Below, in pieces: positions 11,879 to 58,490 of a stretch of DNA of 64,000 nucleotides. The notes under the pieces were generated by a model. It was not told the origin of the DNA and did no database searches. It worked only from the letters and a program-made list of their open reading frames with translations. The position numbers and the translations under genes are program-made. The stretch is from positions 62,001-126,000 of the IMG/VR virus record IMGVR_UViG_3300037010_002844; one strand, given 5' to 3'. The first letter of the stretch is position 1, and each line of letters starts with the position of its first letter.

Positions 11879-11882
11879 AGCT

Positions 11883-12056
11883 TCAGGTCCTCCAAAGACG
11901 CAGAGATATGACTGTTGTGTGCCGTGGCCCCACAGTTGCACGGAGCGTAGCCCTCGTGATCGCATTCAGCTGGGCACGAGTCCGAGTGCCCGCGGTGGTT
12001 GCCAGCGAGACCTTGGCACGGACTATCTTCTCGATCAACTGTTCGTAGGTGTACAT
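11883..12056 (-). CDS. Small hypothetical protein
   Basis: MYTYEQLIEKI..., directly downstream of dnaE fragment 8. Confidence 0.35.
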   Translation of the reverse strand: MYTYEQLIEKIVRAKVSLATTAGTRTRAQLNAITRATLRATVGPRHTTVISLRLWRT

Positions 12057-12067
12057 GGGTTTTATGT

Positions 12068-13198
12068 TTACGTGATTTCCCTCAACTTCCAGACCGTCGT
12101 CGACGCGCCAAAGTCGTCCCTCTTGACCTCGGCACAACACAGGATGAAGGGGTCAGGAAGCTCCTTGCCGCCCCAGACAGAAATCTTCGTGGCCTTGCCA
12201 GTGGGTCCAACCGCAAAGATTTGCACATATTCCTTGCCATTGCGGGTCTTCTTCTTGATGCCCGTCACCGGCTTGCCACCCTTCTTTGCAGCAACAGGGG
12301 CCGTGACAAACCAGACGACCGCCGTGTCACCGTGCTCCAGGTCGTCAATGCTATTGACGCCCTTCTTCTCCAAGGCAGCCAAGATTTCGATGTCAATCAT
12401 GGCGGTGACGTCCAAAGCACCGAAGACGTCGACCATATTTTGAGCACGTTCAGAAGACGACCAGTCCTCGATGTCAGCGTAGTCCCTGACCAACTGGTAG
12501 AAGTTCTTAAGGCCCTCGTGCGGGTCAGACTTCGGGTGTCGCTTGATCAACGCCCCGTGATCGATGTCGACCTCTTCGGTGACCTCGACGCCCTTGCGCT
12601 TCTTGGTCACGGTCTCCACGTGAGAACCGAAGAGGACCTCGTGCATGTGATGATAGTTGTTGAAGACCTTGCCTTCGCCCACGATGTCCATACTGCCGAA
12701 GGCACCGATCTTGACCAGGGCCTCCATCGCCTTCTTGTTGAACTTGCTGTGTTTCCACTCGAAGTTGTCATCCCACAGCAACTCCTCGATAGTGTTGTAG
12801 GGACGGTTGGCCATGATCTCTTCGACCGCCGAGTCGCCGACACCCTTGCAGGACGTCATCGACGGCATCAACTTCTTGCCGGGCAGCGCGGTCCACCCGA
12901 GCCCCGCCAGGTTGATGTCGATCGGGACGATCTGATAGCCCAAGGCCTTTACCTCGCTGAACGCCTTAGCACGTTGAGCAGGAGTGTGCGACATGCTTTC
13001 GAGATAGGCACACAGCCATTCCTCCTCGTGATATGTCATCAGCCAGGCGCACCAGAAGCTGTCAATGGCGTATGCCACTGCATGGCTGTTAGACGTCAGT
13101 ATCCCGTTAGCGAGATAGAACTGGTGATCCGGGTGATCGACTTCGAGGTCATAGGTCTGGTGTCGACCCACGGGTGTGATAGACTTGATGTTACTCAT
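12068..13198 (-). CDS. dnaE: DNA polymerase III alpha fragment 8: split-intein C-part 6 (37 aa, 13088-13198) plus C-terminal extein
   Basis: YDLEV..HQFYLANGILTSN|SHAVAYA. The extein completes the DnaE motif GYGFNK|SHA and includes VPIDIN, KGVGDSAV (HhH) and an OB-like tail. Confidence 0.92.
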   Translation of the reverse strand: MSNIKSITPVGRHQTYDLEVDHPDHQFYLANGILTSNSHAVAYAIDSFWCAWLMTYHEEEWLCAYLESMSHTPAQRAKAFSEVKALGYQIVPIDINLAGLGWTALPGKKLMPSMTSCKGVGDSAVEEIMANRPYNTIEELLWDDNFEWKHSKFNKKAMEALVKIGAFGSMDIVGEGKVFNNYHHMHEVLFGSHVETVTKKRKGVEVTEEVDIDHGALIKRHPKSDPHEGLKNFYQLVRDYADIEDWSSSERAQNMVDVFGALDVTAMIDIEILAALEKKGVNSIDDLEHGDTAVVWFVTAPVAAKKGGKPVTGIKKKTRNGKEYVQIFAVGPTGKATKISVWGGKELPDPFILCCAEVKRDDFGASTTVWKLREIT

Positions 13199-13419
13199 GT
13201 GAGCAGGTCCTTCAACAGGTCTTCGATCGCTCCTGCGTTCGGTTCATCAAGCATTGCTTTAGCATACTCTTCTTCAATGTACTCGTCAGTCGGCTGGAGT
13301 TCAACCTTCGTTTCGCTTTTGCGTCGGTAACGTGCCGCGGCCCGTAACAGTTCGATCGGACTCAGACCCATGCGTTGGGCAATGTCATTCAGTGCGATTT
13401 CAAACGGCGGTCTTTTCAT
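13195..13419 (-). CDS. Small hypothetical passenger gene between the halves of intein 6
   Basis: 74-aa ORF; ATGA overlap with the start of dnaE fragment 8. Confidence 0.55.
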   Translation of the reverse strand: MKRPPFEIALNDIAQRMGLSPIELLRAAARYRRKSETKVELQPTDEYIEEEYAKAMLDEPNAGAIEDLLKDLLT

Positions 13420-14449
13420 ACGCTTTTCCTATCCGATGAACGCCAGGTCGAGGATCTTTCAGGATCTCAAAAAGCTTTTTCAAGCAATCAGGTTCGAAGC
13501 GACCGCCATCCTTGTATGAGAACTGATCGTAAGAAATTCGAATGAGTGTCCAATCATGTTTAGTGATGTAATCATCAAGCATTGCATCCATGCACTTCAC
13601 TCGTTCAAAATTATCCTCGCCTTTAATACGTGCATTAAAATGGATGATTCCATCAAATTCAACATAAATGTGTCTTGATCGATCGGCAATGTCAACTTGC
13701 TTTCTTTTAGATTTGTTTGGAAAAGCAACTGACTTGACGACCTGATTATGAACAAAATCATAACCTTCAACGTTTTTCAACAAATCAAACAACGCTAATT
13801 CCGGAATGCTATGCCAAATAGCATGTGCAGCTTTTGTGCACTTTTCGTAGAACTCATCGGGGTTCAACTCACGCCAACGGGCCAGGCGCTCAGCACGTGC
13901 CTTGAGTATCTCAGGCCGGGTTGACGTTAGTCTTGCAACGTCTGATGAACGTTTACGGGCTTCAGGTCGTCGATTAAGTTCTCCCATTAGTTCAGAGCGA
14001 CGTTTCCTCTCGCCCGGATTGCTCGTGATGGCCTCACTGACCGCACGGCCCATCTTTTCCTTGTAGGCAGTCAAATCATCACCGCGTGCCTTCGCTCGTT
14101 TGAGCCAGGCGAAATTCTGCCCACGATGCTTGAAACGCGCTGTCGAGACTTTCGATGTGATTGCGGCAGTCGGGTACGCTTTCAGGTATTCTTCTTTGCT
14201 CATACCATGCGTCCCCGACAAGTGCTTTGCCAGTGCCTTACCCGTGAAGCCACAGACTTGGCATGTGACACTCTCACTGTCACCGAGTATGAATCCTTGG
14301 CACCTAGCTTGGTGTTTTTCGTAGGCCTTCAGGTAGACGAAGAGCCTGCTACATCGGTCACAACGATGCTGAGGCCCCGTTCGGCAATCATCCACAGGGG
14401 CAACATCTCGTTTGTCTCCTTCGTCCTGAACTTGTGATCCCACGTGCAC
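13400..14449 (-). mobile_element. Free-standing homing endonuclease (C2H2 zinc fingers plus Vsr/DUF559-like nuclease); true start uncertain
   Basis: CDRC, CQVCG..HLSGTH and VDIADRSRHIYVEFDGIIHF...WTLIRI. AT-richer, and sits between IntN6 and IntC6. Confidence 0.8.
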
Positions 14450-15030
14450 TTTACCTTCTCTCCGGTCACCAACTCCACTTCTACCAAGTCTAGCTCACCG
14501 TGGTCGTGTTTTGCAACAACAGGGACGAGGATGTTTTTACCTGAATTCTCATCACGAGACATGACCAGGTCGCCGGGTTCGATGTGTTGAAGCTGCTTTG
14601 TCTCTTTGAACGTGCCGTCTGAAAAAAAGGTATTTACTGGTTCCGAAAAGTACAAACTTTTATTGAAGCCGTAGCCCGCGAAGTACAGAATCTTGTCGTA
14701 GAGGTTGTTGGCCACCTTCTCGGTATAACCGTTGGCGATGCAACCCTTGACGAACCCGTCACGGGTCTCTTGGGCTGCCTTCTTTGCCGCCTCACCGCCC
14801 GAGATGCTGCGCTTCATGATTGCGCGACGGACCTCGTCACACTTGTCCTTCGGGAAGCCGGCAGCCTTCTCGGCGAGTTCCATCACCTGTTCCTGAAAAA
14901 TTATGCAGTTATGCACGAGAAGGCCATTTGCGAAGAAGTTGTTGTTCTTCTTGACCTGGATGTCGTACACAGGCTGTGCAGGAACACGCTTGATCGCACG
15001 GATCTTGACGGGAACTACGTCAGGCATCAC
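14329..15030 (-). CDS. dnaE: DNA polymerase III alpha fragment 7: IntC5 (14908-15030) + 83-aa extein + IntN6 (14332-14658)
   Basis: VYDIQV..NNFFANGLLVHN|CIIFQEQVM...FAGYGFNK|SLYFSEPV...CTWDHKF. Confidence 0.93.
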   Translation of the reverse strand: MMPDVVPVKIRAIKRVPAQPVYDIQVKKNNNFFANGLLVHNCIIFQEQVMELAEKAAGFPKDKCDEVRRAIMKRSISGGEAAKKAAQETRDGFVKGCIANGYTEKVANNLYDKILYFAGYGFNKSLYFSEPVNTFFSDGTFKETKQLQHIEPGDLVMSRDENSGKNILVPVVAKHDHGELDLVEVELVTGEKVKCTWDHKFRTKETNEMLPLWMIAERGLSIVVTDVAGSSST

Positions 15031-15344
15031 TTACGCTCCGTTTCACGATGAGTCTGACAAACAATGTGTAATGACATTGAGCGCGACAAAGCATCACTGC
15101 CTAGAACGACTCGGCAAGGGTTGAGATTTTCCCCCACATGACGCATCCATTCTTGCAAAGCGTTGATCAATCGTTGGGCTTCGTTGAAACCCTCATGCGA
15201 GGGTGGAAACTGACAGCAACCTACCAAATCTCTAGTCCCAGGATCATATGCAATGATTCGCAAATTCCCATGAACGTTCATCTCTAGCGTTAGAGATCCA
15301 TAAACATCGTCATCGATCTCGCTAGTGTAAAGATCTGCGCTCAT
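15027..15344 (-). CDS. Hypothetical passenger gene between the halves of intein 5
   Basis: 105-aa ORF; stop overlaps the fragment 7 start. Confidence 0.55.
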   Translation of the reverse strand: MSADLYTSEIDDDVYGSLTLEMNVHGNLRIIAYDPGTRDLVGCCQFPPSHEGFNEAQRLINALQEWMRHVGENLNPCRVVLGSDALSRSMSLHIVCQTHRETERK

Positions 15345-15345
15345 A

Positions 15346-15591
15346 TCATTTTTCTTTCATGTTCAATGATGATGCGCAGAGTTGGCACACTGGTCCATCA
15401 ACACTCAAAACACGTTGACCATGGTATTCGAGCTCCATATCATTTCCGACCTCTTCATAAGCTCGAAATGTGTCGAACCAGTCGGCATACGTGAGATCAT
15501 CACGCTTTCCAAATGCCGTATGTGACTTCATCGTGTTGATAAAGTTCTTGAACGACGTAAGCAACTCCTCTTCAAAATCATCAATCTTCAT
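15346..15591 (-). CDS. Hypothetical passenger gene between the halves of intein 5
   Basis: 81-aa ORF, tightly packed with its neighbour. Confidence 0.55.
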   Translation of the reverse strand: MKIDDFEEELLTSFKNFINTMKSHTAFGKRDDLTYADWFDTFRAYEEVGNDMELEYHGQRVLSVDGPVCQLCASSLNMKEK

Positions 15592-15595
15592 GTCT

Positions 15596-15810
15596 AAATT
15601 GTCCTCAATTTGAGGTGATAGTTCAAGGCATCAGACTCCCAGACGCGGTACACCGTGAAGCCTCAAGTTCTTGTGGCAAGCGTCCATAATTGATCAAGCC
15701 TAAATTGCTTCTTCATCGCAGGTGTTAGTTCATGCTTCGCTGGGTTACTGTGCCAATAGTCGCCGTCGTACTCGATGATGAGGTTGAGTGATGGCACGAC
15801 GAAGTAGCCT
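15596..15810 (-). pseudogene. Truncated Vsr/DUF559-like homing endonuclease remnant
   Basis: Translation FVVPSLNLIIEYDGDYWHSNP...TRT*GFTVYRVWESD; N-terminus missing, in-frame TGA. Confidence 0.65.
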
Positions 15811-15814
15811 GGTT

Positions 15815-16414
15815 TCAGTACTTCATTCCCAAAATCTCGTCTTCAGACGTCAGTTCACCTGCTTGCACCCAACCACGAGGCGTCATGACAAGGTGATCTT
15901 CAGTCAAAGACAAAGTTTCTCCACCCTCCAGCTCAACCTCGATGATGTCACGTACGCCGTTTGAGGCGACAGCGACAACTTCGTCCATCTCGACGGTCTT
16001 CGTCATTTCATTGTATGACGGAAGCTTAGTTCCCACCATTCCTTGTTCAACGATTTGTCTAATGGGAACCTCACCTTGCTCAGTAAGGATATGTGTGTCA
16101 CCCGTCAAACACGAGTATGTCTTCTTCAGGATGTCGTTGACGCGGTGATCGCCCCACTCCAACTCCTTGCCGTCATTCTTCGCCTCCAAGTACAGTCGAT
16201 CGACTTTGGCGGCCAAGGGACCCGGGCGATAGATGCTGGTCAGCGTCGCGATGTCGATGATGCTCTTGGGCTTGCCTTTGACAAAGAGTCGCTGAGCGCC
16301 CTGGCCCGTGCAATTGTGAACAACGACGTCGTTAGCGACGAAATTATGATGATTTCGCACCTCGATGTCGTAGACGTGGCGCTTACCCACGCTGCGTGAT
16401 GACACAAGCTTCAA
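15815..16414 (-). CDS. dnaE: DNA polymerase III alpha fragment 6: IntC4 (16313-16414) + 67-aa extein + IntN5 (15818-16111)
   Basis: VYDIEV.NHHNFVANDVVVHN|CTGQGAQ...SIYRPGP...KKTYS|CLTGDT...LTEDHLVMTPRGW. Confidence 0.93.
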   Translation of the reverse strand: MKLVSSRSVGKRHVYDIEVRNHHNFVANDVVVHNCTGQGAQRLFVKGKPKSIIDIATLTSIYRPGPLAAKVDRLYLEAKNDGKELEWGDHRVNDILKKTYSCLTGDTHILTEQGEVPIRQIVEQGMVGTKLPSYNEMTKTVEMDEVVAVASNGVRDIIEVELEGGETLSLTEDHLVMTPRGWVQAGELTSEDEILGMKY

Positions 16415-16800
16415 GCGTCGTCTCCTTCTTTTCTAGCAACTGTAGGTCATATCCACTGACAAGTGCACACTTGAGCGTCGGATGCAACGTTACGAATGCG
16501 TCAAACTTCTCCCTAGCATCATCACGCCACCAGCCCTTGACTTCCACGTACACCCGCTTAAAGAGCTCCAACGTCGGTCATTGACGATGGAAGATCATGT
16601 ACGCCTCTCTTGTGAGCTGGATCCTGATCTCCTCCTCGCTGAAGCCCTCGTCCATGCAATGACGCCAGTTGTCATACAGGTCGACGACGCCATTCTTTCC
16701 GTTCCCGTTGCCCGCTGAGTGCAGAAAGTACAAAGGGGCGCTACGATGAGCGGAGCGCGTCCGTACAATCACATGTTGCGGAGTCGTGGGCCTGTTGCGT
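16383..16800 (-). pseudogene. Fragmented PD-(D/E)xK homing endonuclease remnant between IntN4 and IntC4
   Basis: Two short ORFs (16578..16772 and 16383..16571). The second reads VYVEVKGWWRDDAREKF, a nuclease motif III segment. Confidence 0.55.
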
Positions 16801-16856
16801 CTCTGTAAGGCGACATGGCCACGGTCGCGGCGAAACCTGCGACCAAAACGCCCGCC

Positions 16857-17333
16857 TCACGTCAATCCACGAGCTTCGTAACCACTGCTAGACCCAATCA
16901 ACTCGTCGTCTTCGGTTAGGTGCTGTGCCTCAACCCACCCGCGATTCTTCGTCAAGATGGGATGATCAGCGGTGCAGACAAGCTTCTTGCCGTCGTCGAA
17001 CACGAGCTCGATGCACTCCTTGGGTCCTTGGTCGTAAACGACGTCGACGACTGATGTGGTGAACTGCTGCTTGACTTCATCGAAGACCGTCACCTCGTCA
17101 CCGACATGGACGTCCTTGATCAACTTGTACGAGTCATCGCCCATCAGCACTGCCGTGTCCTGGTCGACGCACTGGAAGATGCCTGCCCACTTGCCTTTCT
17201 CGTAGACCTCGTAAGGTTTGGGATCGGTGAAATCAATGACGGCCGGGTGCATGTGCTGCTCGAACCAGGTCTTGATGTCATTGAATGATACCGCATTTGT
17301 ATGTGCGTCAACGTTAGCAACGACTTTTGCCAT
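16857..17333 (-). CDS. dnaE: DNA polymerase III alpha fragment 5: 54-aa extein (no IntC) + IntN4 (16860-17171)
   Basis: IDFTDPKPYEVYEKGKWAGIFQ (DnaE DDxxVY...GVFQ)|CVDQDT...CTADHPILTKNRGW. Confidence 0.9.
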   Translation of the reverse strand: MAKVVANVDAHTNAVSFNDIKTWFEQHMHPAVIDFTDPKPYEVYEKGKWAGIFQCVDQDTAVLMGDDSYKLIKDVHVGDEVTVFDEVKQQFTTSVVDVVYDQGPKECIELVFDDGKKLVCTADHPILTKNRGWVEAQHLTEDDELIGSSSGYEARGLT

Positions 17334-17351
17334 GTCTTTGTAAAGGTACTT

Positions 17352-19031
17352 TCACAGGTCCATAACGTACACCGCGTTGGAGCAACCAAAGATCTTAAAA
17401 AGCCTGTGTTCCATCGCCATCTCTTCTTGTGATGCGATCCCCGGAATCGCCCTGACAGCAAATCTATCGATACGATTTTGTCCGTCCGTCCACCAAAACC
17501 TAGGCTGCGTCATGTGATCAAATCTAAAACCAGATAGTTCATACGCCCGGCCAGTGCCACCCAACCTCATGTCACGGTATGTGATCATTTTTTGGTAACC
17601 ATGCTCACGTGACCAATCCCTGGCAGCGTTGATCAACCGCGACATGCCTCCAACGACGATGGTATCGCGGGCCGTTGAAACCCGCGCCAATTCAATTGTC
17701 TTAGATCCCCACTTAGTCTGCTGGTGCGGTTTTCGCAATGTCAATGCACAAATAATGTTTCCAGCAATGTCCTCTAGCCAGAACGAATGCGACGAAGGAG
17801 TGTTTCCATCGAGGTGATTGTTCGCCATGAACTGAGCGGTGATGGCTGGACGACCGCTGCGAAGATGTAGCTTTCGTGCCATCACGCGAGTAGCAAGACC
17901 AAGCTTTACCCTGATCATGCTTTTGATGATGTTTTTCTTTACATCATGGTGCCATTCATCGTCGAAGATATGTAGCAACGACACACCACGCTCAAGAGCG
18001 CGAGTCGACTTGTCTTGGTGATACGATGGTGGAGTACCGGTCGCCTCACTGTGCCAATAGACACCGTTGCACTCGATGGCAATCCTTCCGTTACCTGACA
18101 CGATGTCCAGCTCATAAGGCGCGATTGACTGTCTGTCGTTGGCGATGGCGTTCGAATCGAGCTTGACGAAGAAATCGAACACCTCACGATGCCAGCGAGA
18201 GAAATTAGCCGGGTAGCACGTTGAACACACCTTTCCCTTGTAAAGGACGTTAAAGGGAACAATATCAGGTACGTTACAACTGACGCATGTCACATGCACC
18301 GGTGTTGAGTATCCAGCAAACTCAAATTTTTCGATGTTCCACCTCGACCGCAGTGCATCAACTCGCCGTTCGACCTCTTCGAGAGACAACCGAAAAGGAG
18401 AGTTAGTGCCGTTCTCGATAAGGCGTTTTCTAGTCTCGATGATCGAACGTTTGATATCTTCAGAATTAGCGTTCCGAGACCAATGATTCAAGCGAACGCC
18501 TTCGCCGATCCGTTCTGATCGCCGTTTGATCCTATCGTCAGTTTCTGACGTCTGACCGTGCTGCGTCCAGTGTTTTTCTACTTGCCATTTTTCAGTCAAT
18601 GCTCGAGAGATGTTATGCGCAGCTCTTGTGATAGATTCATTATTTTCTTTAGTTTGTCCTGTTCTCCAGTGCCCGTGTTTTTTGATGAAATCACGACAAC
18701 CTTGTGCGGCCCTTCGAACCGATTCAGACGTTGTTTCTGACAGCCCCTTGTTCCATGCAGGCAATGATTTTGATTTCCGGCTAAGCGCACCTCTTACTTG
18801 AGAGTTCTTCTTGCTACAAACTCCACAGAGACGTTCATATCCCGTTTGAAAGGTCATGAACTTGACCGGCCCTGAACACTGAACGCACGGTCCAGGGTGC
18901 TCTCGAAAAAGAAGGTACGCAGCCTCCGCATTGAGCCCGTGCTTTTTAAGGAGATGTGCGCGGAGCGAATTTAGGCTAGCTTTTCGCAATGGATCATTGC
19001 ACTGTGGGCACCTCGAAGGACACGATGTCAT
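17352..19031 (-). mobile_element. Homing endonuclease: zinc finger, NUMOD3-like repeats, Vsr-like nuclease and C-terminal GNAT-like domain
   Basis: CPQC..HLLKKH, WNKGL, ELDI..IAIECNGVYWHSE, HIFDDEWH, ELARVS..VVGGMSRL..TYRD and YELSGF. Start placed at ATG 19031 (track ORF begins at 19151). Confidence 0.8.
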
Positions 19032-19851
19032 CGCCGGGCCCGAGCTCCCTCGCAAGGATGGTGCCCCTGTTGCTGGTGACGATTCGTTGGTCGCCGTAGA
19101 CGCCTCGTGTCGTTCCATCGTCGAGTTGGATCTCAAACCACCCTCTTTCATGTCGTTCCTTTTTGATGATGAGCTCGATGGCGCGCTCGATGAGCCGCAT
19201 CGTTTCTAGACCTAGGAGGTCGTACTTGATGAACTCTCCGATCTTCTCAAGGTGTTTATAATTTACGCCCTCGACCCAAGGTGACTGTGGCTCGCGGACG
19301 CCGGCCTTGCCTTTGGACGTCACCAAAGGCATCTTGTTGGGCAAATCGTCTGCAATCAGCACACCACCCGCGTGACGACCGAGACTACGATTCTGCTTGA
19401 AGAGGATCTTGATCGACTCGGCGACGACCGGGTACTTCTCAATGAAGCCGCGAAACGACGGGCTGACCGGCTGCTTACACTCTGGGCTACAGCCCTGGCA
19501 GATGGACTTCGACTCCGGGCCCTTAGGAGCCCTGCAGTGGAAGGCCATGGCCTCATCGTAGGTCAAGACGAACAGATTCTTGTCGTCGCCTTCCTTCATC
19601 GTCGCCTTACGGACCTCGTCCTCGACGGTCCGCGTGGCAGCGTTGGTCTCCTCGAATGGGATGCCGTAGAACTTGCCGATATCCTTTACAAGCGTTTTTA
19701 GTTTGAAACAGTTATAATTGCTGATGGGAACGACGTTTTCCCACCCAAAAAAGTTTCGAAGTTCATCAAGAACCTCATCTCGCCTGGCAAGATCGGTGTT
19801 GTGAACAACGACGCTCTTGTTGGACGCCAAAAATGAATGAACGACCATCAC
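18994..19851 (-). CDS. dnaE: DNA polymerase III alpha fragment 4: very short IntC3 (19798-19851) + palm extein + truncated Hint-like tail
   Basis: HSFLASNKSVVVHN|TDLARRDEV, RSLGRHAGGV and IKYDLLGL (third catalytic Asp). Ends in EIQLDDG..GDQRIVTSNRG..ARELGPGDDI. Confidence 0.9.
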   Translation of the reverse strand: MMVVHSFLASNKSVVVHNTDLARRDEVLDELRNFFGWENVVPISNYNCFKLKTLVKDIGKFYGIPFEETNAATRTVEDEVRKATMKEGDDKNLFVLTYDEAMAFHCRAPKGPESKSICQGCSPECKQPVSPSFRGFIEKYPVVAESIKILFKQNRSLGRHAGGVLIADDLPNKMPLVTSKGKAGVREPQSPWVEGVNYKHLEKIGEFIKYDLLGLETMRLIERAIELIIKKERHERGWFEIQLDDGTTRGVYGDQRIVTSNRGTILARELGPGDDIVSFEVPTVQ

Positions 19852-21570
19852 ATGAATCCTAACTCAACTACAGTTGAATTTACATGCGCTCGTTGTGGTC
19901 GAAACCACGAAACGCTACGAGCATTGAAGATCCACGAGGCACGACACAGGCGAGAAGACGCCAGGCCTCCCAAACAGGTGTCAACTTACGCGTGTCCGTG
20001 GTGTGAGGCGTCATATGACAGCGGGCGTAAGTTGACATTGCACTGCACAAAAACGCACCAAAAATCACCCGTCGTTGTGTATGAAACAAGGTACCCAGGG
20101 TGCAGGAAGACGTGCATCGATTGTTGCGACTGGGTCAGGTTCATCGATCAAGAAAAAGGATACCCCGAACGGTGTCCACGTTGTAGCCGAAAACACGCAT
20201 ACGCGTCCAAGGGCACCTCGTCATGGAACAAAGGCCTGACGAAAGACAATGACGAACGCATGTCAGCCAGTGCTGCAAACATGCGAGCTCACTACAAGGA
20301 ACACGGTCACCACAACTCCGACAAGACAAAGGAAAACAACGAAAGCCTTAAACAAAAGGCGGCAAAAATCAGCGACAGCCTGCGGAGGTATTATGCAACG
20401 CACAGCGGCTGGTCACTTGGCCTGACAAAGGATACGTCTAGCATCATTGAATCTCGCAGTAAGAAGATCAGCGCTTCGTTGAAAGGACGATTCTTTAGCG
20501 ACGTAACGCTTGAAAAAATGCGCAAGGCAAAGTTGCTGACGCACGACGAGGTACAAAAACGCCTCAAAGAAAAGCAGCTTAAACTCATTGACGAATATGT
20601 CGATACTGTCACCAAAGCGCGCATCGAATGCACGATATGTTCAACAATATTTGAGCGTTGCGTTGGCGCAGTGTTCAACAACGAGGCCAAGTGTCCCACC
20701 TGCTTTCCGCCTTGGTCAGACAAAACGAGCAGGTGGCAACAGGACGTCTACGCATTTATCCAGACGCTGGCACCTGACGCAGTCCTTAGCGATCGTAAGA
20801 CGCTCGGCGGAATGGAGCTCGACATACTCATTCCATCGCGCATGTTTGCCATCGAGTGCAATGGCCTATACTGGCACAGCGAGGCCGCCAATAGATTTGA
20901 GCACGATCACGCGGAAAAGAAGAGATTGCTGTCCCTCAAAGCCGGCGTATCGCTTTTCACGTTATTTGAGGATGAGTGGCGCGACAAACGACCGATAATC
21001 GAAAGCATGTTGCGCCATCGCCTTGGGTTTTCTACCAAAGTCGATGCGCGTAAGTTGAAAGCAGAACGCTGCGAGCCCGAAGAAGTTCGAGAATTCATCA
21101 ATCAGTGCCACCTCGACGGTCACGTGAGGGCCCAATTTGCCGTGCGATTGGTAACCTCATCGGGCGAAATCGTAGGCGCCTGCAGCCTTAGGTGGGCACG
21201 AAATGGGGCAGACAGAACGACGATTGAGATCGCTCGCCTGTGCTTCAAGCTTGGCACACATGTACGAGGCGGGGTGTCAAAATTGCTATCAAAGGCAAAA
21301 GCTATAGCAAGAGAAAACAATGCAGCGAGGTTGATGTCTTACTCAGACAATCGCTTGGGAGGAAACGGTTATGCCACCTCAGGCATGAAGTTCAACGGTA
21401 CCACAGTCGCTCGCTTCTGGTGGACTGACTTCATGCATCGTTACGACAGGTTCAAGTACCGAGCCAACAAGAAGCAAGGTCTAACAGAAAAACAGGTAGC
21501 GGAGGCTGCCGGCGTTTATCGCATCTATGGCTGTAGCAACTCTCGCTACGTCTTAGACGTCACAGCGTGA
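19837..21570 (+). mobile_element. Homing endonuclease paralogous to 17352-19031, on the opposite strand
   Basis: Two C2H2 fingers, WNKGLTK, ELDILIP..AIECNGLYWHSE, FEDEW, EIARLC..GGVSKLL and SYSDNR. Confidence 0.82.
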
Positions 21571-21872
21571 CGCTAATGTCATCGTCAAACTTTGAGGACG
21601 CATTTTCTTTGAGCCAGAAGATGGCGTCAATTGTGCGCTCGTCGGCGTCGGCGTCATCGCACGACGTAGCCCCATAGTATGGGGGCCAAATCGTGCTCAA
21701 ACCCTTTAACGCGCAGTTTGACCTGACAATCTTGAAATTCAGGATTTTCTGCAGCTCTCGTCTGAGCTATTCTTTCCAGGCCAGACACTATCACATCATC
21801 TGCTCGGCAGAATCGCCGTTGTCTGTAAGCTGCACCGCATCAACGTTGCTCGGACACGGTCCCAACTCCAGC

Positions 21873-22610
21873 TCAAATTTCATAGTTGCGCTCGCTGTGG
21901 TCTGTTCTTCTCTTAGACGCGCACCAATCGCTGCAAAAATTGTCTCCTTCGCCACACGCAAGGAACGTGCCAGGAATGACGCCCATGCAATAACCGACGT
22001 CATGTGATGGATCACCTCCACTTAGAATGGACGTATTGAACGGTACCACGTGGAATCTGTGATCGTCTTCAACAGTCAGGTCGACGTATCTAGCGTTGGA
22101 AGAGCCCCAACCACCGTGCTCGATCGATACGACCTCAACGCTGCCGCATGATGCCATCAATTCATCTCCGACCTTAAGGTCGCGGCAGTACACGATGACG
22201 CCGTCAGCTCTGACAAATTTGTGACCGGGCACCACCAAAATGTGGCCCAACGTACCATCATTGGCCCTAACTCTGACCCAGACAGCGTCCTCGAATGGCC
22301 GCAAATTTCTAGCATAGGTCGCAGTTACTGCGTGTGGCATTCCATCGCCTCCCAGGACGACGTCGCCGACAATGATGTCAACAGCTCGCTTATGAGTGCC
22401 GTCTGTCATGACGACAAGATGGTCCTCGTGGACGCAGTCGATATCAGGAGCACCAGAGTTATGTGTCAGCACCCAATCGCTATCGTTGTTGGACACCCAA
22501 AACGTATGCTGGCCTTCGACCTCGATGTCGATGAGTTCTACACTTTCATCGACAACCTCGATAGCTTCAATTTTGGCCGTGCTTGCTGATGAGATGTTGG
22601 GTTCCTGCAT
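21873..22610 (-). CDS. dnaE: DNA polymerase III alpha fragment 3: IntC2 (22458-22610) + 7-aa extein SGAPDID (22437-22457) + long IntN3
   Basis: LIDIEVEGQHTFWV..VLTHN|SGAPDID|CVHEDH...VPGHKF...DLKVGD...YVDLTVEDDHRF. Confidence 0.9.
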   Translation of the reverse strand: MQEPNISSASTAKIEAIEVVDESVELIDIEVEGQHTFWVSNNDSDWVLTHNSGAPDIDCVHEDHLVVMTDGTHKRAVDIIVGDVVLGGDGMPHAVTATYARNLRPFEDAVWVRVRANDGTLGHILVVPGHKFVRADGVIVYCRDLKVGDELMASCGSVEVVSIEHGGWGSSNARYVDLTVEDDHRFHVVPFNTSILSGGDPSHDVGYCMGVIPGTFLACGEGDNFCSDWCASKRRTDHSERNYEI

Positions 22611-23508
22611 AGTCCCTGTGCTCTAGATTGGCAATCGTATGGTACAAACCTTGTCGACGAAGTTCACCATAGAAGTCATTCATGTACACGACGTCGATGC
22701 GCTGACCAGACGCCACAACGACTTCCCGTGAACGTGCGTTTGAGTTAAGCAACTTTGAGAAACGCGATTTGCCTTCTCGCACACCTTTCAACTCCACGTA
22801 TCGGTCCTCATCACTGAACCAAAAGTCTGGAGTGTAACACTTCTCTTTGCCATCGATGACAACATGGAAAGACCTATGTTCATAGAATGGCATCTTACCG
22901 AGGTGCAAGCAATATCTGTAGTAGTCGGCTTCGAACGAGCTCTTGAAGTACGGGCTGTTTAGGATGTCGGAACGAAAACACGAGCGTCCGTTCACATGTG
23001 AAGCAACCATATCACGTGACTGTGCCTCGCGGGTGCACCGTTTGGAACAGAACCGCGGCACGTAGCTCTTCTTGGTGACGATCGGTTCGCTACAAACTTC
23101 GCATACCAACGTGTGGCGGTCAAACCTCGATGCAGCGAAACATTTGGGTGAACAGAACCTGCGATTGACGTTCTTCGTTGAGAAAGTGCCTAGACACTGT
23201 ACACATGTCAGTGTACGGAGCTCATTCTTTGTCAGCGCTTTCGCAGTGTACTTGTGCCTGCACGCATTCGAACATAGTTTTCTGTTGTTGTGACACTTTG
23301 GAACGTAGAACTCATCGCCGTACTCGACGCACGTCTTCACAAGCCTCGAGGGCATGGGAGCGTGTGACATCAGCTTCCTGTGAGCGACGGCACACTCATC
23401 AGTGCAGTACGGGCGATGGAGCCTACTACCAGAACCCTTGCAGTTGGGCTCATAGTTGAACTGAAACATAATACCACAGTGTTTACACTGTTTCTCAATG
23501 ATGCTCAT
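22567..23508 (-). mobile_element. Homing endonuclease with tandem CxxC...CSxxC zinc repeats and a PD-(D/E)xK nuclease
   Basis: At least four CxxC...CSxxC units, SSFEADY and YTPDF..RYVELKG. ATG at 23508 overlaps the fragment 2 tail. Confidence 0.82.
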
Positions 23509-23992
23509 AGTGGTACGTGTACAGCTCGTCACTCGTCGACAGCTCAGATGTATACTTCTTCACAGGTTGTCCATCAGGACCCACTGTCAACCACACATGA
23601 TTTTCAGAACACGTGAACGTAGTACCATTCACCTTCACGCGGTACGTCTTCTCATGTTTTGTGGTCATGGTGAACGTAACTTTACGGTGTGAGCCATCCT
23701 GTGAGACAACGCTGTCACCGACTTTCACGTCTCGAAGCGCGGACGACGAACCATCTGACATCAATACCTTTGTGTCTGGCGACAGACACCTGTGAACGCT
23801 AAGGAATCGCGCGAAAGGCAGGTCCCAGAACAACGGGTCCAAGTCGGTGATGTATAGGACGTAGGCGACCAGAGAGCCACCGCCCGAATTGTGGACTGCA
23901 ATACCTTCCACGTTGTAAGTGTGGCTGTTTTCCACACACAGGTCTACGACCTCACCCTTATACGGTACGACAGTCTTACTTCTGAGCTTCAT
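23495..23992 (-). CDS. dnaE: DNA polymerase III alpha fragment 2: IntC1 (23888-23992) + 33-aa extein + IntN2 (23498-23788)
   Basis: [21 protein letters not shown]|[27 protein letters not shown]|CLSPDT...CSENHVW. Confidence 0.93.
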
Positions 23993-24076
23993 GATATGCG
24001 TTCGCTCTCTTCATGTAAGCCTTGAGATCCCTGTCTAATAGACATTTGACGAGGATCAGGTAAACTTAGTTGAGTT

Positions 24077-25762
24077 TCATTCAACCTCGATTAGGTCATC
24101 ATCTTCAGTCAAGTGTTGTGCTTCAATCCACCCACGATTCTTCGTCAGAAACTTATGCTCCTTGGTGCACCTGATCTTCTTACCGTCATCAAACTCGAGT
24201 TCTAGCAGCTCCTCATCAACCTGATACCTGAAGATCTGAGTCACCATCTGATCAACACCATATGCATCCTTGATAACGTCGCCCACCTTGATGGTGCCAA
24301 TGGGAGCATGCATGCCGTCAGCCATTAGAACCCGCGTCTCAGGAACGAAACAACCGCGGGCTGGGCCGGTAAGGCACACATTGCGTGCCAGCTCCATGAT
24401 CTTCTGGTAGGAAATGAAGTAGTCAGAGTTTTTCATCACCTTAATGACGCCGAGTTCCTCCTTGAGGCGCGCGATATACTCTGGCTTGTCTTGAAGACCA
24501 CGCTTCACCATGCCCACCTTACAAAGCGAGATGAGGTGATTGAACGAGGTCGTGCCTTCGGGCACCAACAACCTCGTCGGAAACTTGGGCGAACGATCGG
24601 GTGGAATCTCCCCGATGACACTGTGTGCGATATCGTGAGTCCGCTCAATGGCGTCACAGACGACTTCATCGTCATACCAGTCGGTGCCTTCCTTGGAGCG
24701 CTGGTACTCATCCCACATCTGTTGGGCGTTCTTCGGATAGAGCTCACACTTCAGCTCATCCTTCGACTTCGGAATCGCGTCAGGATTGATCTCCTGGTAG
24801 TTCATCCAACCCAGGCGCTTGTAGAGCTCACGGTCCTTCCAACGATCGGGATTATAGTAGTGAGCATCGCCGGTGACGATCAGCTGCTTGTTGAGCCCAT
24901 TGCGACGAGCGAACTCCAGGATCGCGCGGTTGACGAGGTTCTGCGCCGGTAGGCGATTGAACTGCAGCTCGAGGAAGTAGTTTCCTTCGCCGACTGCATC
25001 GACCATGTGCTGGTAGGTATTGCCCACCGCGACAACGCATTTCTCGAGCAGCACAGGGTCACTGAGCAACCGTGCGTCGAGCTCGTCAAACTTGTACTGT
25101 TGGATTTCCTGGAATATGGAGTACGCCGGCATGCCGCCGATACAAGCGCTGCTGACGATGATGTCGCCGCCTTTGGCTGCCTCTTTGAGGACAGCATGGT
25201 CAATGCGCGGGAACTTGTAGAAGCCCTTCAAGAATCCCTTCGAACATGCTGCGAAGATCGCCAACAGGCCCTTCTGGTTCTTGGGCAGAATGACTAGGTG
25301 ATGCCGTCGGTTGACGGGATTGAAGTGTTTGGTCGATTTGGACTCTTCCTCGTTTTCGACAGTCAAGGCGTTGGACATCTCAATGTCCTCAGTCTCATCA
25401 TTTTCATCGATGGTGGCGATGATCTTGGTCTGCAGCTTTTCCTGCTCCTTAGCAAGCTTGGCCGCAACCCTCCTGTCTCCCTTCGCCTGCTCTGCGAGTT
25501 CGACGTCCTTCTTCCATTGCTCCAGGTCGGGATGGTAGTACGCCTCGACGCCGGGAATGTACTTGAACGACTTTCCCTTATTGGCCTTGGCCCACTCCTC
25601 GACCCACAGTTGAGCGTGGGCATAGGAGTTCATGTTCCCGTGCTCGGTGATGGCATGGCCATCGAGCCCGTTCTCCATGCACCACTTGAAGTGTTCATCG
25701 GGATAGCCCAAACCATCGAAGGGCGCATTACGAGAAGCCCGTGTGGTTGTGCAAACCGACAA
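24077..25762 (-). CDS. dnaE: DNA polymerase III alpha fragment 1: PHP domain to GPARG + IntN1 (24080-24352)
   Basis: PFDG, AITEHGNM, PGVEAY, HLVILPKN, SACIGG, YFLELQ, TGDAHY, RLKEEL..I, DYF and TGPARG|CFVPET...CTKEHKFLTKNRGW. The first 13 aa of the track ORF are probably off-frame. Confidence 0.92.
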   Translation of the reverse strand: MSVCTTTRASRNAPFDGLGYPDEHFKWCMENGLDGHAITEHGNMNSYAHAQLWVEEWAKANKGKSFKYIPGVEAYYHPDLEQWKKDVELAEQAKGDRRVAAKLAKEQEKLQTKIIATIDENDETEDIEMSNALTVENEEESKSTKHFNPVNRRHHLVILPKNQKGLLAIFAACSKGFLKGFYKFPRIDHAVLKEAAKGGDIIVSSACIGGMPAYSIFQEIQQYKFDELDARLLSDPVLLEKCVVAVGNTYQHMVDAVGEGNYFLELQFNRLPAQNLVNRAILEFARRNGLNKQLIVTGDAHYYNPDRWKDRELYKRLGWMNYQEINPDAIPKSKDELKCELYPKNAQQMWDEYQRSKEGTDWYDDEVVCDAIERTHDIAHSVIGEIPPDRSPKFPTRLLVPEGTTSFNHLISLCKVGMVKRGLQDKPEYIARLKEELGVIKVMKNSDYFISYQKIMELARNVCLTGPARGCFVPETRVLMADGMHAPIGTIKVGDVIKDAYGVDQMVTQIFRYQVDEELLELEFDDGKKIRCTKEHKFLTKNRGWIEAQHLTEDDDLIEVE

Positions 25763-25820
25763 ATCGTCGGGGCACTCGCACCGAGCTTCCCTTGGCGTCC
25801 TCCTTTCCTTGCTGCGTCAT
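25728..25820 (-). CDS. dnaE: True N-terminal 30 aa of DnaE (FVGLHNHTGFS), cut off from fragment 1 by a 7-nt insertion containing TAA
   Basis: ATG 25820 overlaps the upstream stop. Removing TAATGCG (25724-25730) restores the canonical PHP motif HxHTxFSxxDG. Confidence 0.8.
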   Translation of the reverse strand: MTQQGKEDAKGSSVRVPRRFVGLHNHTGFS

Positions 25821-26175
25821 TTACCTTCCCACCTTACCTTGTCACGGTACTGTAGACCCAATTGACGGTACTGGACACCGTCAATGACCACGATAGTCAC
25901 TTCAGGAAACTTGATTCGCATCAGTGCAAGCTGATAGCACGCCTTGTCAGACCACCTTCCCTTAATTTCGTAGTACACGCTTTCATCGTGAACGAAAATC
26001 TGGTGTGTACCAAGCCGGCCATGTCGGCGATCTGCGGCAACGTGGCCATACCAATGGGTATCAGCACGCGGAGCCACTTGGGCAGCTTGTTCCAGGTGGG
26101 CTTCAGCTGGGTGACGAGCTATGAAACAACGATGCAACCAGCGGCAACCTCGGCAGCAATGTCTGCAAGAACCAT
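25817..26175 (-). pseudogene. Decayed segment: membrane-protein remnant followed by a frameshifted PD-(D/E)xK endonuclease remnant
   Basis: MVLADIAAEVAAGCIVVS*LVTQLKPTWNKLPKWLRVL, and YTPDF slipping in a T run into VHDESVYYEIKG. Confidence 0.5.
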
Positions 26176-26211
26176 GTCGTCATGGTAAACCGGAAGCGAT
26201 CAGTTTTACAT

Positions 26212-27234
26212 CTAGGCGATGACCTTCCGGAAGTAATCGATGGAACGTTTGAGGCCTTCTGCGAGCTGCACCTTGGGCTCCCACCCTAGACGATTCTGGG
26301 CTTGGGTGATGTCGGGCCGACGCTGCGTCGGGTCATCGACAGGCAGCGGTTTGTAGTCAAACCAACGGGCCACATCGCGGTGAGGTGCCTCGCGCCCACC
26401 GTAGATTTGGTGAATGACCTCCTTCGCCAACTGATTCATCGTGAACTCGTGCGGGTTGCCGAGGTTGATGGGCATCCGCGGGTTGTTGCCCAGATCGCCC
26501 AAGGTCACAATGCCTTTGATCAGGTCGTCCACGTAACAAAAGCTACGTGTCTGTTGACCGTCACCGTAGATCGTCAACTTCTCGCCCTTCAAGGCCTGGA
26601 CGATGAAATTGCTGACGACCCGGCCATCGTATGGGTCCATGTGCGGACCGTAGGTGTTGAAGATCCGGACCATGCGAGCGTCGACACCGTGGGTATGTAG
26701 GTAGTCATAGCACAGGGCCTCTGCCGCACGTTTTCCCTCGTCGTAACAGGCTCTGGGCCCGTAGGAGTTGACGCGACCTCGGTATGACTCGACCTGCGGC
26801 GAACTCTCGGGATCACCATAGACCTCAGAAGTCGAAGCGTGGACCACGATCGATCCATGCGATGCCGCCAGTTCCAGGACGTTCTGGACGCCTAGCGTAC
26901 AGGTCATCATGGTCTCCACGGGCATGCGCTGGTAGATGGGCGGCGATGCTGGGCAGGCGAAGTTGTAGATGATGTCGAAGCGTACCGAGTGCATCGACCC
27001 GGTGTCGTAATCGTGAATCACGCGACTAAAGCGACTGTCTCCATGGACGTCAGCGATATCGCAGTACATCAACGTCGCCAGCGGAAACTTCTTGATCTCA
27101 TCGACCTGAATCGACTCCGGCTTCGACGAACAGAAATTGTCGAGGCCGAGGACCTTGTCACCCGCCCTCAAGTGATGTAGCATCAAGTGCGAACCCAGAA
27201 AACCAGCGGCTCCCGTGACGAGGACAGTCTTCAT
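26212..27234 (-). CDS. uxs: UDP-glucuronate decarboxylase (UDP-xylose synthase, UXS-like SDR)
   Basis: GAAGFLGSHL, NFACPASP, ASTSEVYGDP, VNSYGPRACYDEGKRAAE, RIFNTYGP, DGRVVSNFIVQAL, QTRSFCYVDDL and DDPTQRRPDI. Confidence 0.9.
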   Translation of the reverse strand: MKTVLVTGAAGFLGSHLMLHHLRAGDKVLGLDNFCSSKPESIQVDEIKKFPLATLMYCDIADVHGDSRFSRVIHDYDTGSMHSVRFDIIYNFACPASPPIYQRMPVETMMTCTLGVQNVLELAASHGSIVVHASTSEVYGDPESSPQVESYRGRVNSYGPRACYDEGKRAAEALCYDYLHTHGVDARMVRIFNTYGPHMDPYDGRVVSNFIVQALKGEKLTIYGDGQQTRSFCYVDDLIKGIVTLGDLGNNPRMPINLGNPHEFTMNQLAKEVIHQIYGGREAPHRDVARWFDYKPLPVDDPTQRRPDITQAQNRLGWEPKVQLAEGLKRSIDYFRKVIA

Positions 27235-58452: not shown

Positions 58453-58490
58453 GAGCAAATCGTAACTCGCAAAAGGCCACGATTACACGG

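What the first reader, a model, noticed from the sequence alone, without database searches (positions are those of the whole stretch)
22437..22457. A 245-aa gene product donates only 7 residues, and they are in the polymerase active site
Seen: fragment 3 is IntC2-SGAPDID-IntN3, and the mature motif reads PDID|TD. Established: this corresponds to E. coli alpha D401/D403. Inference: the two metal-binding Asp residues are encoded on different genes about 2.6 kb apart, so activity strictly requires double ligation of a heptapeptide. This could act as a post-translational switch on replication timing. Steric limits with two inteins 7 aa apart may impose a reaction order.
Basis: partly seen in the sequence, partly recalled or inferred. 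Interest (0 to 1): 0.74.

Follow-up and report, generated by a model that had tools for sequence, protein, structure and literature searches.

The report
Seven-residue active-site piece between two split inteins
In a 309-kb phage genome the replicative polymerase gene (dnaE) is cut into eight separate genes, and one 245-residue product appears to contribute only the seven residues SGAPDID, which hold two of the three catalytic aspartates, by being spliced in at both ends by two different split inteins.

Summary
Window 22437-22457 (minus strand) encodes SGAPDID inside a 245-aa ORF (21873-22610). That ORF is the C-half of split intein 2, then 7 extein residues, then the N-part of split intein 3.

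Natural relatives fix both boundaries:
- Alleles without intein 2 read ..FLSVYRKGAPDID|C.
- Alleles without intein 3 read THN|SGAPDIDTDLADRD.
- Some relatives carry inteins 1 and 2 unsplit.
- Five diverged relatives keep the same double-split piece.

Aligned to E. coli alpha, both metal-binding Asp (D401, D403) lie inside the heptapeptide. The "TD" Asp is D405. The third catalytic Asp (D555) is on fragment 4, 2.6 kb away.

Most likely two different split inteins graft the heptapeptide between fragments 2 and 4. They probably do not cross-react. Intein 2 is gp41-1-like and canonical. Intein 3 is split in every member found, with a ~130-150-aa N-part and a 17-20-aa C-part. No natural split of that type turned up in the literature searched.

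The layout fits the known "fractured gene" pattern (split inteins plus free-standing homing endonuclease genes). I rate it a new, extreme variant of a known kind. A regulatory switch or a forced reaction order has no support. No splicing was tested.

Caveat: a 7-nt insertion breaks the 5' end of fragment 1 in this genome.

The parts
21873..22610 (-). Fragment 3 (F3), 245-aa ORF: IntC2 + 7-aa extein + IntN3
22458..22610 (-). IntC2, residues 1-51: the C-half of canonical, gp41-1-like split intein 2. Block F is ELIDIEVEGQHTF and block G is WVLTHN.
   Evidence: The motif is conserved in 11 homologues. This segment is contiguous with IntN2 in P0018 and P0025. dN/dS is 0.13 against L015.
22437..22457 (-). 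Extein 3, SGAPDID. Ser52 is the +1 nucleophile of intein 2. Asp56 and Asp58 correspond to E. coli D401 and D403. Asp58 is also the -1 residue of intein 3.
22041..22436 (-). IntN3 core, residues 59-190. It holds Cys1, the block B His130 and block F (YVDLTVEDDHRFHVVP). This is the whole Hint fold except the last strand.
   Evidence: AF2 pLDDT is above 90. VIA-align gives Z 15-16, with the solved inteins covered up to 5-6 residues from their C-termini. Invariant residues are C59, H130, D177, F186 and P190. dN/dS is 0.25.
21876..22040 (-). IntN3 tail, residues 191-245. It has a conserved ..GY hairpin, then a Cys-rich motif (GVIPGTF.ACGEG.N.CS..C) that also occurs as small stand-alone proteins.
23495..23992 (-). 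Fragment 2 (F2): IntC1 (23888-23992), extein 2 of 33 aa SGGGSL..FLSVHR (23789-23887), and IntN2 (23498-23788, starting CLSPDTKV)
22567..23532 (-). Free-standing endonuclease-like gene (321 aa) between the halves of intein 2. Its 3' end overlaps the start of F3 by 44 nt.
   Evidence: PHROG hits annotated 'HNH endonuclease' and 'endonuclease'. Orthologues sit at the same place in L004 and L006.
19837..21570 (+). Homing-endonuclease-like gene (577 aa) between IntN3 and IntC3, on the opposite strand
   Evidence: phrog_3339 'homing endonuclease', E=3.5e-59. The L008 orthologue has the same position and orientation.
18994..19851 (-). Fragment 4 (F4). IntC3 is 17-18 aa (19798-19851, ..HSFLASNKSVVVHN). 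Extein 4 (19156-19797) starts TDLARRDEV and holds the D555 equivalent (KYDLLGL; Asp codon 19219-19221). A 53-aa non-extein tail follows (18997-19155).
24077..25762 (-). Fragment 1 (F1): PHP domain and start of the palm (extein 1 down to 24353, ending ..GPARG) plus IntN1 (24080-24352). The true 5' end lies upstream in another frame; see the 7-nt insertion at about 25724-25730.
12068..17333 (-). Fragments 5-8: F5 16857-17333, F6 15815-16414, F7 14329-15030, F8 12068-13198. They carry split inteins 5, 6 and 7. An endonuclease-like ORF lies at 13400-14449.
   Evidence: All junctions were checked against the contiguous relative L008:6098-8293.
17352..19151 (-). Homing-endonuclease-like gene (599 aa) at the F4/F5 break
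   Evidence: phrog_3339, E=1e-59

Best explanation
F3 is the bridging piece of a multiply fractured dnaE gene of a roughly 309-kb phage.

What is shown:
- The gene is in eight co-oriented ORFs.
- F3 is IntC of intein 2, then SGAPDID, then IntN of intein 3.
- The heptapeptide corresponds to E. coli alpha residues 397-403 and carries both D401 and D403 equivalents.
- The partner halves lie on F2 (IntN2) and F4 (IntC3).
- All class-1 splicing residues are present and conserved: Cys1 in both IntN parts, the block B His, the terminal His-Asn, and Ser+1 or Thr+1.
- Both inteins are under purifying selection.
- Intein-less, cis-intein and split versions of both sites exist in relatives.

What is inferred: after translation IntN2 binds IntC2, and IntN3 binds the 17-18-aa IntC3. 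Two independent protein trans-splicing reactions then join ..FLSVHR-SGAPDID-TDLARR... This rebuilds the palm motif, so the two Asp of F3 and the D555-equivalent Asp of F4 sit in one chain.

The two inteins are unlikely to cross-react. They are unrelated in sequence and are cut at different places in the Hint fold. Intein 2 is cut at the usual endonuclease-insertion site (97 + 51 aa). Intein 3 is cut just before the last strand (about 132-aa core + 17-18 aa). This should also keep F3's own two intein parts from reacting with each other.

The layout is best explained as the outcome of selfish inteins and homing endonuclease genes invading two neighbouring, highly conserved target sequences of an essential gene. 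It does not look like a dedicated control device.
For: Translation and ORF.

Domains.

E. coli numbering and alignment. D401/D403/D555 are named as the Mg ligands in PMC3919608.

Natural boundary controls and conservation.

The contiguous relative L008 defines every junction.

Short IntC3: it is bounded by in-frame stops 1-5 codons upstream of the start in four of the six genomes examined (window, L004, L011, L012), and the called start gives 17-20 aa in all six.

IntN3 is a near-complete Hint fold.

Purifying selection: dN/dS 0.25, 0.13 and 0.06.

Endonuclease genes lie between the halves.

The same DNA is in contigs from further runs.

No group I intron signal.

Dissimilarity of the intein halves.

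The pattern matches fractured genes, including three dnaE loci, in Dassa et al. 2009, PMC2677866.
Against: - No splicing, peptide or polymerase activity was measured.
- The only complex prediction gave no answer.
- Block B Thr is replaced: Ser in intein 2 and Val-Pro in intein 3.
- Asp at position -1 of intein 3 is not a typical favourable flank. This point is from my own knowledge.
- In this genome a 7-nt insertion with a TAA separates the first ~20-30 codons of dnaE (PHP motif HNH) from the rest. The enzyme may be N-terminally truncated, need recoding, or be damaged.
- The F4/F5 break has no functional intein. The final enzyme would then be two chains at best.
- The genome also has a small family-A polymerase gene.
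Confidence: 0.8

Rival explanations
1. Regulatory device. The separately encoded heptapeptide makes polymerase activation depend on a three-component double splicing. This step times or gates phage DNA replication, possibly with an enforced reaction order.
For: - The two catalytic Asp are physically absent from every other fragment.
- F4 lies beyond a convergent gene, so it probably needs its own promoter.
- In relatives F3 and F4 are separated by 2-5.6 kb of other genes.
- Intein 3 stays split even where no endonuclease gene lies between the halves (L013).
Against: - Both inteins are absent in close relatives with otherwise similar dnaE genes.
- Inteins 1 and 2 occur as ordinary cis inteins elsewhere.
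- Endonuclease genes sit in the gaps.
- Synonymous divergence of IntN3 is much lower than that of the flanking extein (0.32 against 2.06). This suggests recent transfer, though the flank sample is small.
- No redox-sensitive or condition-sensing feature was identified.
- Promoter and terminator scans are at chance level.
Confidence: 0.1
2. Decay. The dnaE locus of this phage is a dying gene overrun by mobile elements. F3 no longer yields a functional product.
For: - The 7-nt insertion and stop near the 5' end of F1, found in two independently assembled contigs.
- A degenerate intein remnant at F4/F5.
- A family-A polymerase gene elsewhere in the genome.
Against: - All eight extein segments are open. 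Excluding the 7-residue piece, which tblastn could not detect, six of the seven matched segments are 71-82% identical to L008 and the C-terminal one is 46%.
- All catalytic Asp and all splicing residues are intact.
- dN/dS is well below 1 for the intein parts.
- The same F3 architecture persists in lineages only 50-60% identical.
- The genome is at 13-16x assembler depth in several samples.
Confidence: 0.07
3. Non-covalent assembly only. The intein halves act as docking domains, and the heptapeptide is held in the active site without peptide-bond formation.
For: - The F4/F5 break appears to work this way at best, since it has no nucleophiles.
- A phage RNR fragmented by a mobile element is reported to assemble through interaction domains (title and abstract of PMC3045599).
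Against: - At both F3 junctions Cys1, the block B His, His-Asn and Ser/Thr/Cys+1 are conserved, including in distant relatives.
- Residue 52 is Ser or Cys exactly in those alleles that carry intein 2. It is Lys, Ile, Glu or Ala where intein 2 is absent.
- About 290 residues of intein, in two assembled Hint domains, would remain attached at the palm active site.
Confidence: 0.05
4. Side product or other product. F3's own IntC2 and IntN3 react with each other and cyclise or release the heptapeptide, as in a SICLOPPS construct. In that case F3 has a role other than donating residues to the polymerase.
For: F3 has the SICLOPPS topology IntC-peptide-IntN (my own knowledge of that method). IntN3 lacks only the last strand, and IntC2 also ends in a ..LTHN strand.
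Against: - IntC2 belongs to intein 2. It is contiguous with IntN2 in P0018 and P0025.
- The dedicated partner IntC3 is conserved at the head of F4 in six genomes.
- The heptapeptide is the invariant polymerase motif.
Confidence: 0.02

Closest known systems
Fractured genes: split inteins with free-standing homing endonuclease genes (Dassa et al. 2009, PMC2677866). The paper includes three environmental dnaE loci, one of which has part of a second intein.
   Same: - An essential DNA-metabolism gene is cut into adjacent co-oriented ORFs that end and start with intein halves.
- An endonuclease gene sits in the gap, and its 3' end overlaps the next piece.
- The source is aquatic or phage-like.
- That paper also describes an intein-less fracture with short inserted tails, like F4/F5 here.
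   Different: - Here one gene carries six split inteins plus one intein-less break, giving eight pieces.
- Two breaks lie 7 codons apart, so a whole ORF contributes only 7 residues.
- One endonuclease gene is on the opposite strand.
- I could not check whether the 2009 dnaE sites coincide with these, because the supplements are not held.
gp41-1 naturally split intein (PDB 6riz, 6qaz)
   Same: Intein 2 has the same canonical split position and a similar IntC (..ELIDIEV..H.F....LTHN|S). F2 hits 6riz by sequence.
   Different: The host protein and insertion site differ. Here it sits between the R396 and V397 equivalents of DnaE. Activity is untested.
Engineered short-IntC split inteins: Ssp/Npu DnaE with a 15-residue IntC (Aranko et al. 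2009, PMC2664965) and S11-type splits (Lin et al. 2013, PMC3620165)
   Same: Intein 3 has a near-complete N-part and a 17-20-aa C-part that supplies the last strand and His-Asn.
   Different: - Intein 3 is natural.
- It is split in every DnaE member recovered.
- IntC3 carries a conserved extra HS(F/S) strand, and IntN3 carries a conserved tail, both of unknown role.
- The review read here lists only a short-IntN natural atypical intein, AceL-TerL.
Cyanobacterial split DnaE intein (Ssp, Npu)
   Same: A trans-spliced DnaE.
   Different: It has a single split in the fingers region, with the halves at distant loci. The inteins here are at other sites, several of them in the palm active site.
Engineered tandem or multi-piece trans-splicing with orthogonal split inteins. 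Examples are Shi & Muir 2005 (seen only in the reference list) and Pinto et al. 2020, PMC7090010 (abstract). SICLOPPS constructs are a further comparison, from my own knowledge.
   Same: A middle piece of the form IntC(a)-peptide-IntN(b) is ligated at both ends. Short peptides between intein halves are tolerated in SICLOPPS.
   Different: This arrangement is natural, with a 7-aa middle extein that is the catalytic motif of the product.

Membership tests
Class 1 split intein (intein 2: IntN2 on F2, IntC2 on F3) | Cys or Ser at intein position 1 | tested here: met
   F2 residue 69 is Cys (CLSPDTKV). It is conserved in L004, L006 and P0018.
Class 1 split intein (intein 2) | Block B TxxH | tested here: met
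   The motif is CSENH, with Ser in place of Thr and the His kept. It is conserved as CS..H in relatives.
Class 1 split intein (intein 2) | C-terminal His-Asn followed by Ser, Thr or Cys | tested here: met
   ..LTHN|S. The THN is invariant in 11 sequences, and the +1 residue is Ser or Cys.
Class 1 split intein (intein 3: IntN3 on F3, IntC3 on F4) | Cys1, block B His, block F, and C-terminal His-Asn plus a nucleophile | tested here: met
   C59, H130 and D177 are invariant. IntC3 reads ..VVVHN|T in the window and ..HN|T, S or C in six genomes. The block B Thr is not kept (Val-Pro-Gly-His).
Class 1 split intein (both inteins) | Hint fold | tested here: met
   For IntN3, AF2 pLDDT is above 90 and Z is 15-16 against solved inteins. 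For intein 2, the cis version in P0018 is modelled confidently.
Class 1 split intein (both inteins) | Protein trans-splicing activity | not testable with these tools
   The complex prediction was inconclusive. An expression assay is needed.
Fractured gene (Dassa 2009) | Adjacent ORFs of one host gene carrying intein halves, with a free-standing endonuclease gene between them | tested here: met
   The endonuclease gene between F3 and F4 is on the opposite strand.
DnaE / Pol III alpha | PHP domain, palm with three catalytic Asp, fingers and HhH | tested here: met
   Pfam and NCBIfam hits cover the pieces. The D401, D403 and D555 equivalents are present. PHP motif I is separated from the rest by a frameshift.
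Atypical split intein with short IntC (S11- or C15-like) | The C-fragment holds only the final strand or strands, and the N-fragment is a near-complete fold | tested here: met
   IntC3 is 17-20 aa as called. In-frame stops 1-5 codons upstream bound it in four of the six genomes. IntN3 residues 59-190 cover the solved inteins up to 5-6 residues before their C-termini.
SICLOPPS-like cyclising unit | The IntC and IntN that flank the peptide are halves of the same intein | tested here: not met
   IntC2 is contiguous with IntN2 in P0018 and P0025. The partner of IntN3 is IntC3.
Group I intron-interrupted gene | Intron RNA structure between exons | tested here: not met
   No Rfam match at E<=1 in 11500-26500 on either strand.

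The most novel reading that the evidence does not exclude
The double trans-splicing of a separately encoded 7-residue active-site cassette is a domesticated, rate-limiting checkpoint that controls when the phage replicase becomes active. In this reading intein 3 is no longer a selfish passenger. It is split in every member found, has a short C-part, and keeps conserved extra strands on both halves that could exchange on docking.
Probability: 0.1. Interest if true: 0.85.

Novelty: new variant of a known kind. Interest (0 to 1): 0.68.

Why it matters
- It would be a natural case of tandem, multi-piece protein trans-splicing in which a whole gene exists to deliver seven residues. Those residues include two of the three catalytic aspartates of a replicase. 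This is an extreme of how far selfish elements can dismantle an essential gene without killing it.
- One gene would offer six split inteins that natural selection must have kept from cross-reacting. That is directly useful for multi-fragment protein ligation.
- Intein 3 would be a natural split intein with a peptide-sized (17-20 aa) C-part. So far this has been obtained by engineering, and it is wanted for semisynthesis.
- The allelic series in relatives (intein-less, cis intein, split with endonuclease gene, split without it) gives a ready-made series for testing the intein-to-split-intein fracturing model.

Tried and rejected
- **Group I introns as the joining mechanism.** No Rfam hit.
- **Assembly chimera.** Rejected. 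The stretch is identical in contigs of other runs. Some of these samples may be sister samples of the source.
Rejected.
- **Three-chain complex prediction (F3 + F2 part + F4 head).** The result was 'no answer', so it is not used as evidence.
- **Promoter and terminator scan.** Counts were at chance level.
- **'Self-capping' of IntN3 by its own tail.** The NCBIfam intein_Cterm model matches F3 177-197. But structural alignments stop at residue 190-192, so the idea is not supported and is left open.
- **A contiguous (unsplit) relative of intein 3.** None found among the DnaE hits. The longer hits P0069 and P0049 are unrelated Hint-bearing proteins.
- **Whether the 2009 dnaE sites are the same as these.** Supplements are not held.
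- **Literature search for this arrangement.** Searches covered jumbo phages, multiple inteins, adjacent inteins and atypical natural splits. Nothing was found. The library is incomplete, so this does not prove priority.

Full report
**Where the window lies.** The window is bases 62001-126000 of a 309,433-base IMG/VR virus record estimated 91% complete. Runs holding this DNA are sediment and microbial-mat metagenomes. The nearest phage DnaE genes in GenBank are only about 25% identical.

**The observation.** Window 22437-22457 on the minus strand translates to SGAPDID. It lies in the 245-aa ORF 21873-22610.
- Residues 1-51 end in ..ELIDIEVEGQHTFWVS..DWVLTHN, which are intein blocks F and G, followed by Ser.
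- Residues 59 onward begin CVHEDH and match Hint models.

The whole dnaE gene lies on the minus strand in eight ORFs, checked:

| Piece | Window coordinates |
|---|---|
| F1 | 24077-25762 |
| F2 | 23495-23992 |
| F3 | 21873-22610 |
| F4 | 18994-19851 |
| F5 | 16857-17333 |
| F6 | 15815-16414 |
| F7 | 14329-15030 |
| F8 | 12068-13198 |

Endonuclease-like genes lie in four of the gaps: 22567-23532, 19837-21570 (plus strand), 17352-19151 and 13400-14449. Two of them match a PHROG annotated as homing endonuclease at E about 1e-59.

**Natural controls for the boundaries.** A search with F3 found 17 related proteins.
- Six lack intein 2 and read ..FLSVYRKGAPDID|CVHEDH...
- Six lack intein 3 and read ..THN|SGAPDIDTDLADRD.. 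(or SDLA).
- Four, plus one more, keep the same IntC2-heptapeptide-IntN3 piece at 50-60% identity.

A library-wide HMMER search added DnaE proteins in which inteins 1 and 2 are ordinary contiguous mini-inteins. In these the heptapeptide (CGSPDID or SDAPDID) and IntN3 follow in the same chain (P0018, P0025).

One relative, L008, has dnaE in only three pieces. Its last piece is contiguous from the head of F4 to the end of the protein. This fixed every junction in the window.

Residue 52 is Ser or Cys exactly where intein 2 is present. It is Lys, Ile, Glu or Ala where intein 2 is absent, as expected for a +1 nucleophile.

**Which aspartates.** The PDB alignment of F2 gives E. coli numbering: residues 397-403 are VSMPDFD. 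A MAFFT alignment of E. coli DnaE (locus L009), the joined window exteins and L008 puts SGAPDID on 397-403.
- Both D401 and D403 equivalents are therefore in the heptapeptide.
- The Asp of 'TD' is D405.
- KYDLLGL on F4 holds the D555 equivalent.

PMC3919608 names D401, D403 and D555 as the Mg-coordinating residues and D405 as an additional conserved Asp of DnaE. Two are on F3 and the third is on F4.

Intein 1 also sits in the active-site region, at GPARG|SGGGS, which corresponds to E. coli 362-364.

**Intein 2.** IntN2 is 97 aa and IntC2 is 51 aa. This is the usual split position, with gp41-1-like motifs. F2 hits the gp41-1 intein structure by sequence.

**Intein 3.** Intein 3 is unusual in several ways.
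- In every DnaE hit the IntN3-like domain ends the protein.
- The partner at the head of the next piece is 17-20 aa in six genomes, including very distant ones. It is bounded by in-frame stops 1-5 codons upstream in four of them. The consensus is ..HS(F/S)......(V/S)HN followed by Thr, Ser or Cys, then Asp.
- An AF2 model of F3 has pLDDT above 90 for residues 60-200.
- VIA-align superposes residues 59-190 on solved inteins at Z 15-16. It covers those inteins up to 5-6 residues before their C-termini.

IntN3 is therefore the whole Hint fold minus the last strand. This resembles the engineered 15-residue-IntC and S11-type splits.

The block F His of IntN3 is not conserved in distant members, while the His of IntC3 is. 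IntN3 also has an invariant F...PF motif and a tail of unknown role.

**Evidence of function.**
- dN/dS is 0.25 for IntN3 (window against L014, dS 0.32).
- dN/dS is 0.13 for IntC2 (window against L015).
- dN/dS is 0.06 for IntN2 (window against L006, dS saturated).
- The extein segments are all open. Six of the seven that tblastn matched are 71-82% identical to L008, and the C-terminal one is 46%.
- The stretch 18900-24100 is identical, or differs at one base, in single contigs of other runs.

**Sterics and order.** In an AF2 model of the natural precursor segment of P0018 (extein 2, complete intein 2, heptapeptide, IntN3), both Hint domains are confident. The heptapeptide is a low-confidence linker. 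This is weak evidence that two folded inteins 7 aa apart are compatible.

The allelic series is stronger evidence:
- Intein 3 functions where the heptapeptide is already joined to extein 2.
- Intein 2 functions where the heptapeptide is already joined to extein 4.
- A complete intein 2 adjacent to IntN3 exists in nature.

No order is therefore required by chemistry. Whether one order is preferred is unknown. The three-chain complex prediction gave no answer.

**Mechanism proposed.** Two orthogonal trans-splicing reactions insert SGAPDID between F2 and F4. Orthogonality is inferred from two observations. The halves are dissimilar in sequence. The two inteins are cut at different positions in the fold.

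The arrangement fits the fractured-gene model of Dassa et al. 2009, in which an intein invades, an endonuclease gene then invades the intein, and the gene breaks. Relatives show each of these stages.

**Caveats specific to this genome.**
- Relative to L008, L006 and L015, a 7-nt insertion (TAATGCG, about 25724-25730) follows ..RFVGLHNHTGFS. It puts a TAA and a frame change between PHP motif I and the rest of F1. The same sequence is in an independently assembled contig. A +1 shift at the stop would restore the frame with two extra residues. I cannot tell whether this is a lesion, a tolerated truncation or recoding.
- The F4/F5 break has no nucleophiles. Its tail is homologous to the second half of IntN1 and IntN5, with TxxH replaced by YGDQ, and its 13-aa head lacks His-Asn. 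It looks like a degenerate intein used at most for docking.
- The genome also encodes a 408-aa family-A polymerase domain protein, RecA, DnaB and an RNR with a cis intein.

**Comparison and novelty.** Fractured genes, split DnaE inteins, inteins at active sites and engineered tandem trans-splicing are all known. I could not find the following described in the searches:
- a natural middle piece that contributes only seven residues, which carry two catalytic Asp;
- an eight-piece dnaE;
- a natural family of split inteins with a peptide-sized C-part.

I rate it a new variant of a known kind. It is of real interest to intein and phage-replication specialists and to protein engineers. The functional claims are all still to be tested.

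Noticed in passing
window 25724-25730 (minus strand), 5' end of F1: A 7-nt insertion (TAATGCG) relative to three relatives puts a TAA and a frame change between the PHP motif ..HNHTGFS and ..PFDGLGY. The same sequence is in an independently assembled contig. A +1 shift would restore the frame with two extra residues. It could be a lesion, a truncation or recoding.
   Followed up: partly
window 18997-19155 (F4 tail) and 17295-17333 (F5 head): The F4/F5 break is not a working intein. The 53-aa tail is homologous to the second half of IntN1 and IntN5 but has lost Cys1 and TxxH. The 13-aa head lacks His-Asn, and the next residue is Ala. It is probably a degenerate intein used for docking, so the mature enzyme would be two chains. 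Relatives carry a second tail variant.
   Followed up: partly
window 19798-19851 (IntC3) and 22041-22436 (IntN3); L004, L008, L011, L012, L013: Intein 3 is a family found only in split form, with a 17-20-aa C-part, at the same DnaE site in very diverged genomes. In L013 no endonuclease gene lies between the halves. In L004 and L015, 2-5.6 kb of unrelated genes, including a DnaJ gene, lie between them.
   Followed up: yes
window 21918-21989 (F3 residues 208-231): A Cys-rich motif (GVIPGTF.ACGEG.N.CS..C) at the end of F3 also occurs as small stand-alone proteins of 37-147 aa (P0052, P0057, P0065, P0068). It is missing from F3 of several relatives, so it may be a fused small gene.
   Followed up: partly
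window 24080-24352 (IntN1) and 16860-17171 (IntN5): IntN1 and IntN5 are 48% identical (44 of 92), while their IntC partners are much less alike. This raises the question of how cross-splicing within one gene is avoided.
   Followed up: no
window 21876-22436 compared with L014: Synonymous divergence of IntN3 (0.32) is far lower than that of the adjacent IntC1 + extein 2 (2.06; only 68 codons). This hints at recent lateral transfer of the intein between lineages.
   Followed up: no
window 46405-50046; G000:C1:173834-176803: Other intein-bearing genes in the same genome: an RNR large subunit with a contiguous intein, and a 1509-aa ORF outside the window with several intein matches.
   Followed up: no
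window 57232-58458, 54006-55250, 50129-51592: A small family-A DNA polymerase domain protein (408 aa), RecA and a DnaB-like helicase. The phage therefore has a second polymerase-like gene besides dnaE.
   Followed up: partly
window 38-583 and 587-1192; 1595-2254: A proteasome-subunit-like gene with a similar neighbouring ORF that has no Pfam hit, and a thymidylate-synthase-family gene. These are unusual cargo upstream of the replication module.
   Followed up: no
L010 (Bacillus phage vB_BauM_KLEB27-3, OM634661.1): Its annotated DnaE is also in two CDSs separated by an HNH endonuclease gene.
   Followed up: no
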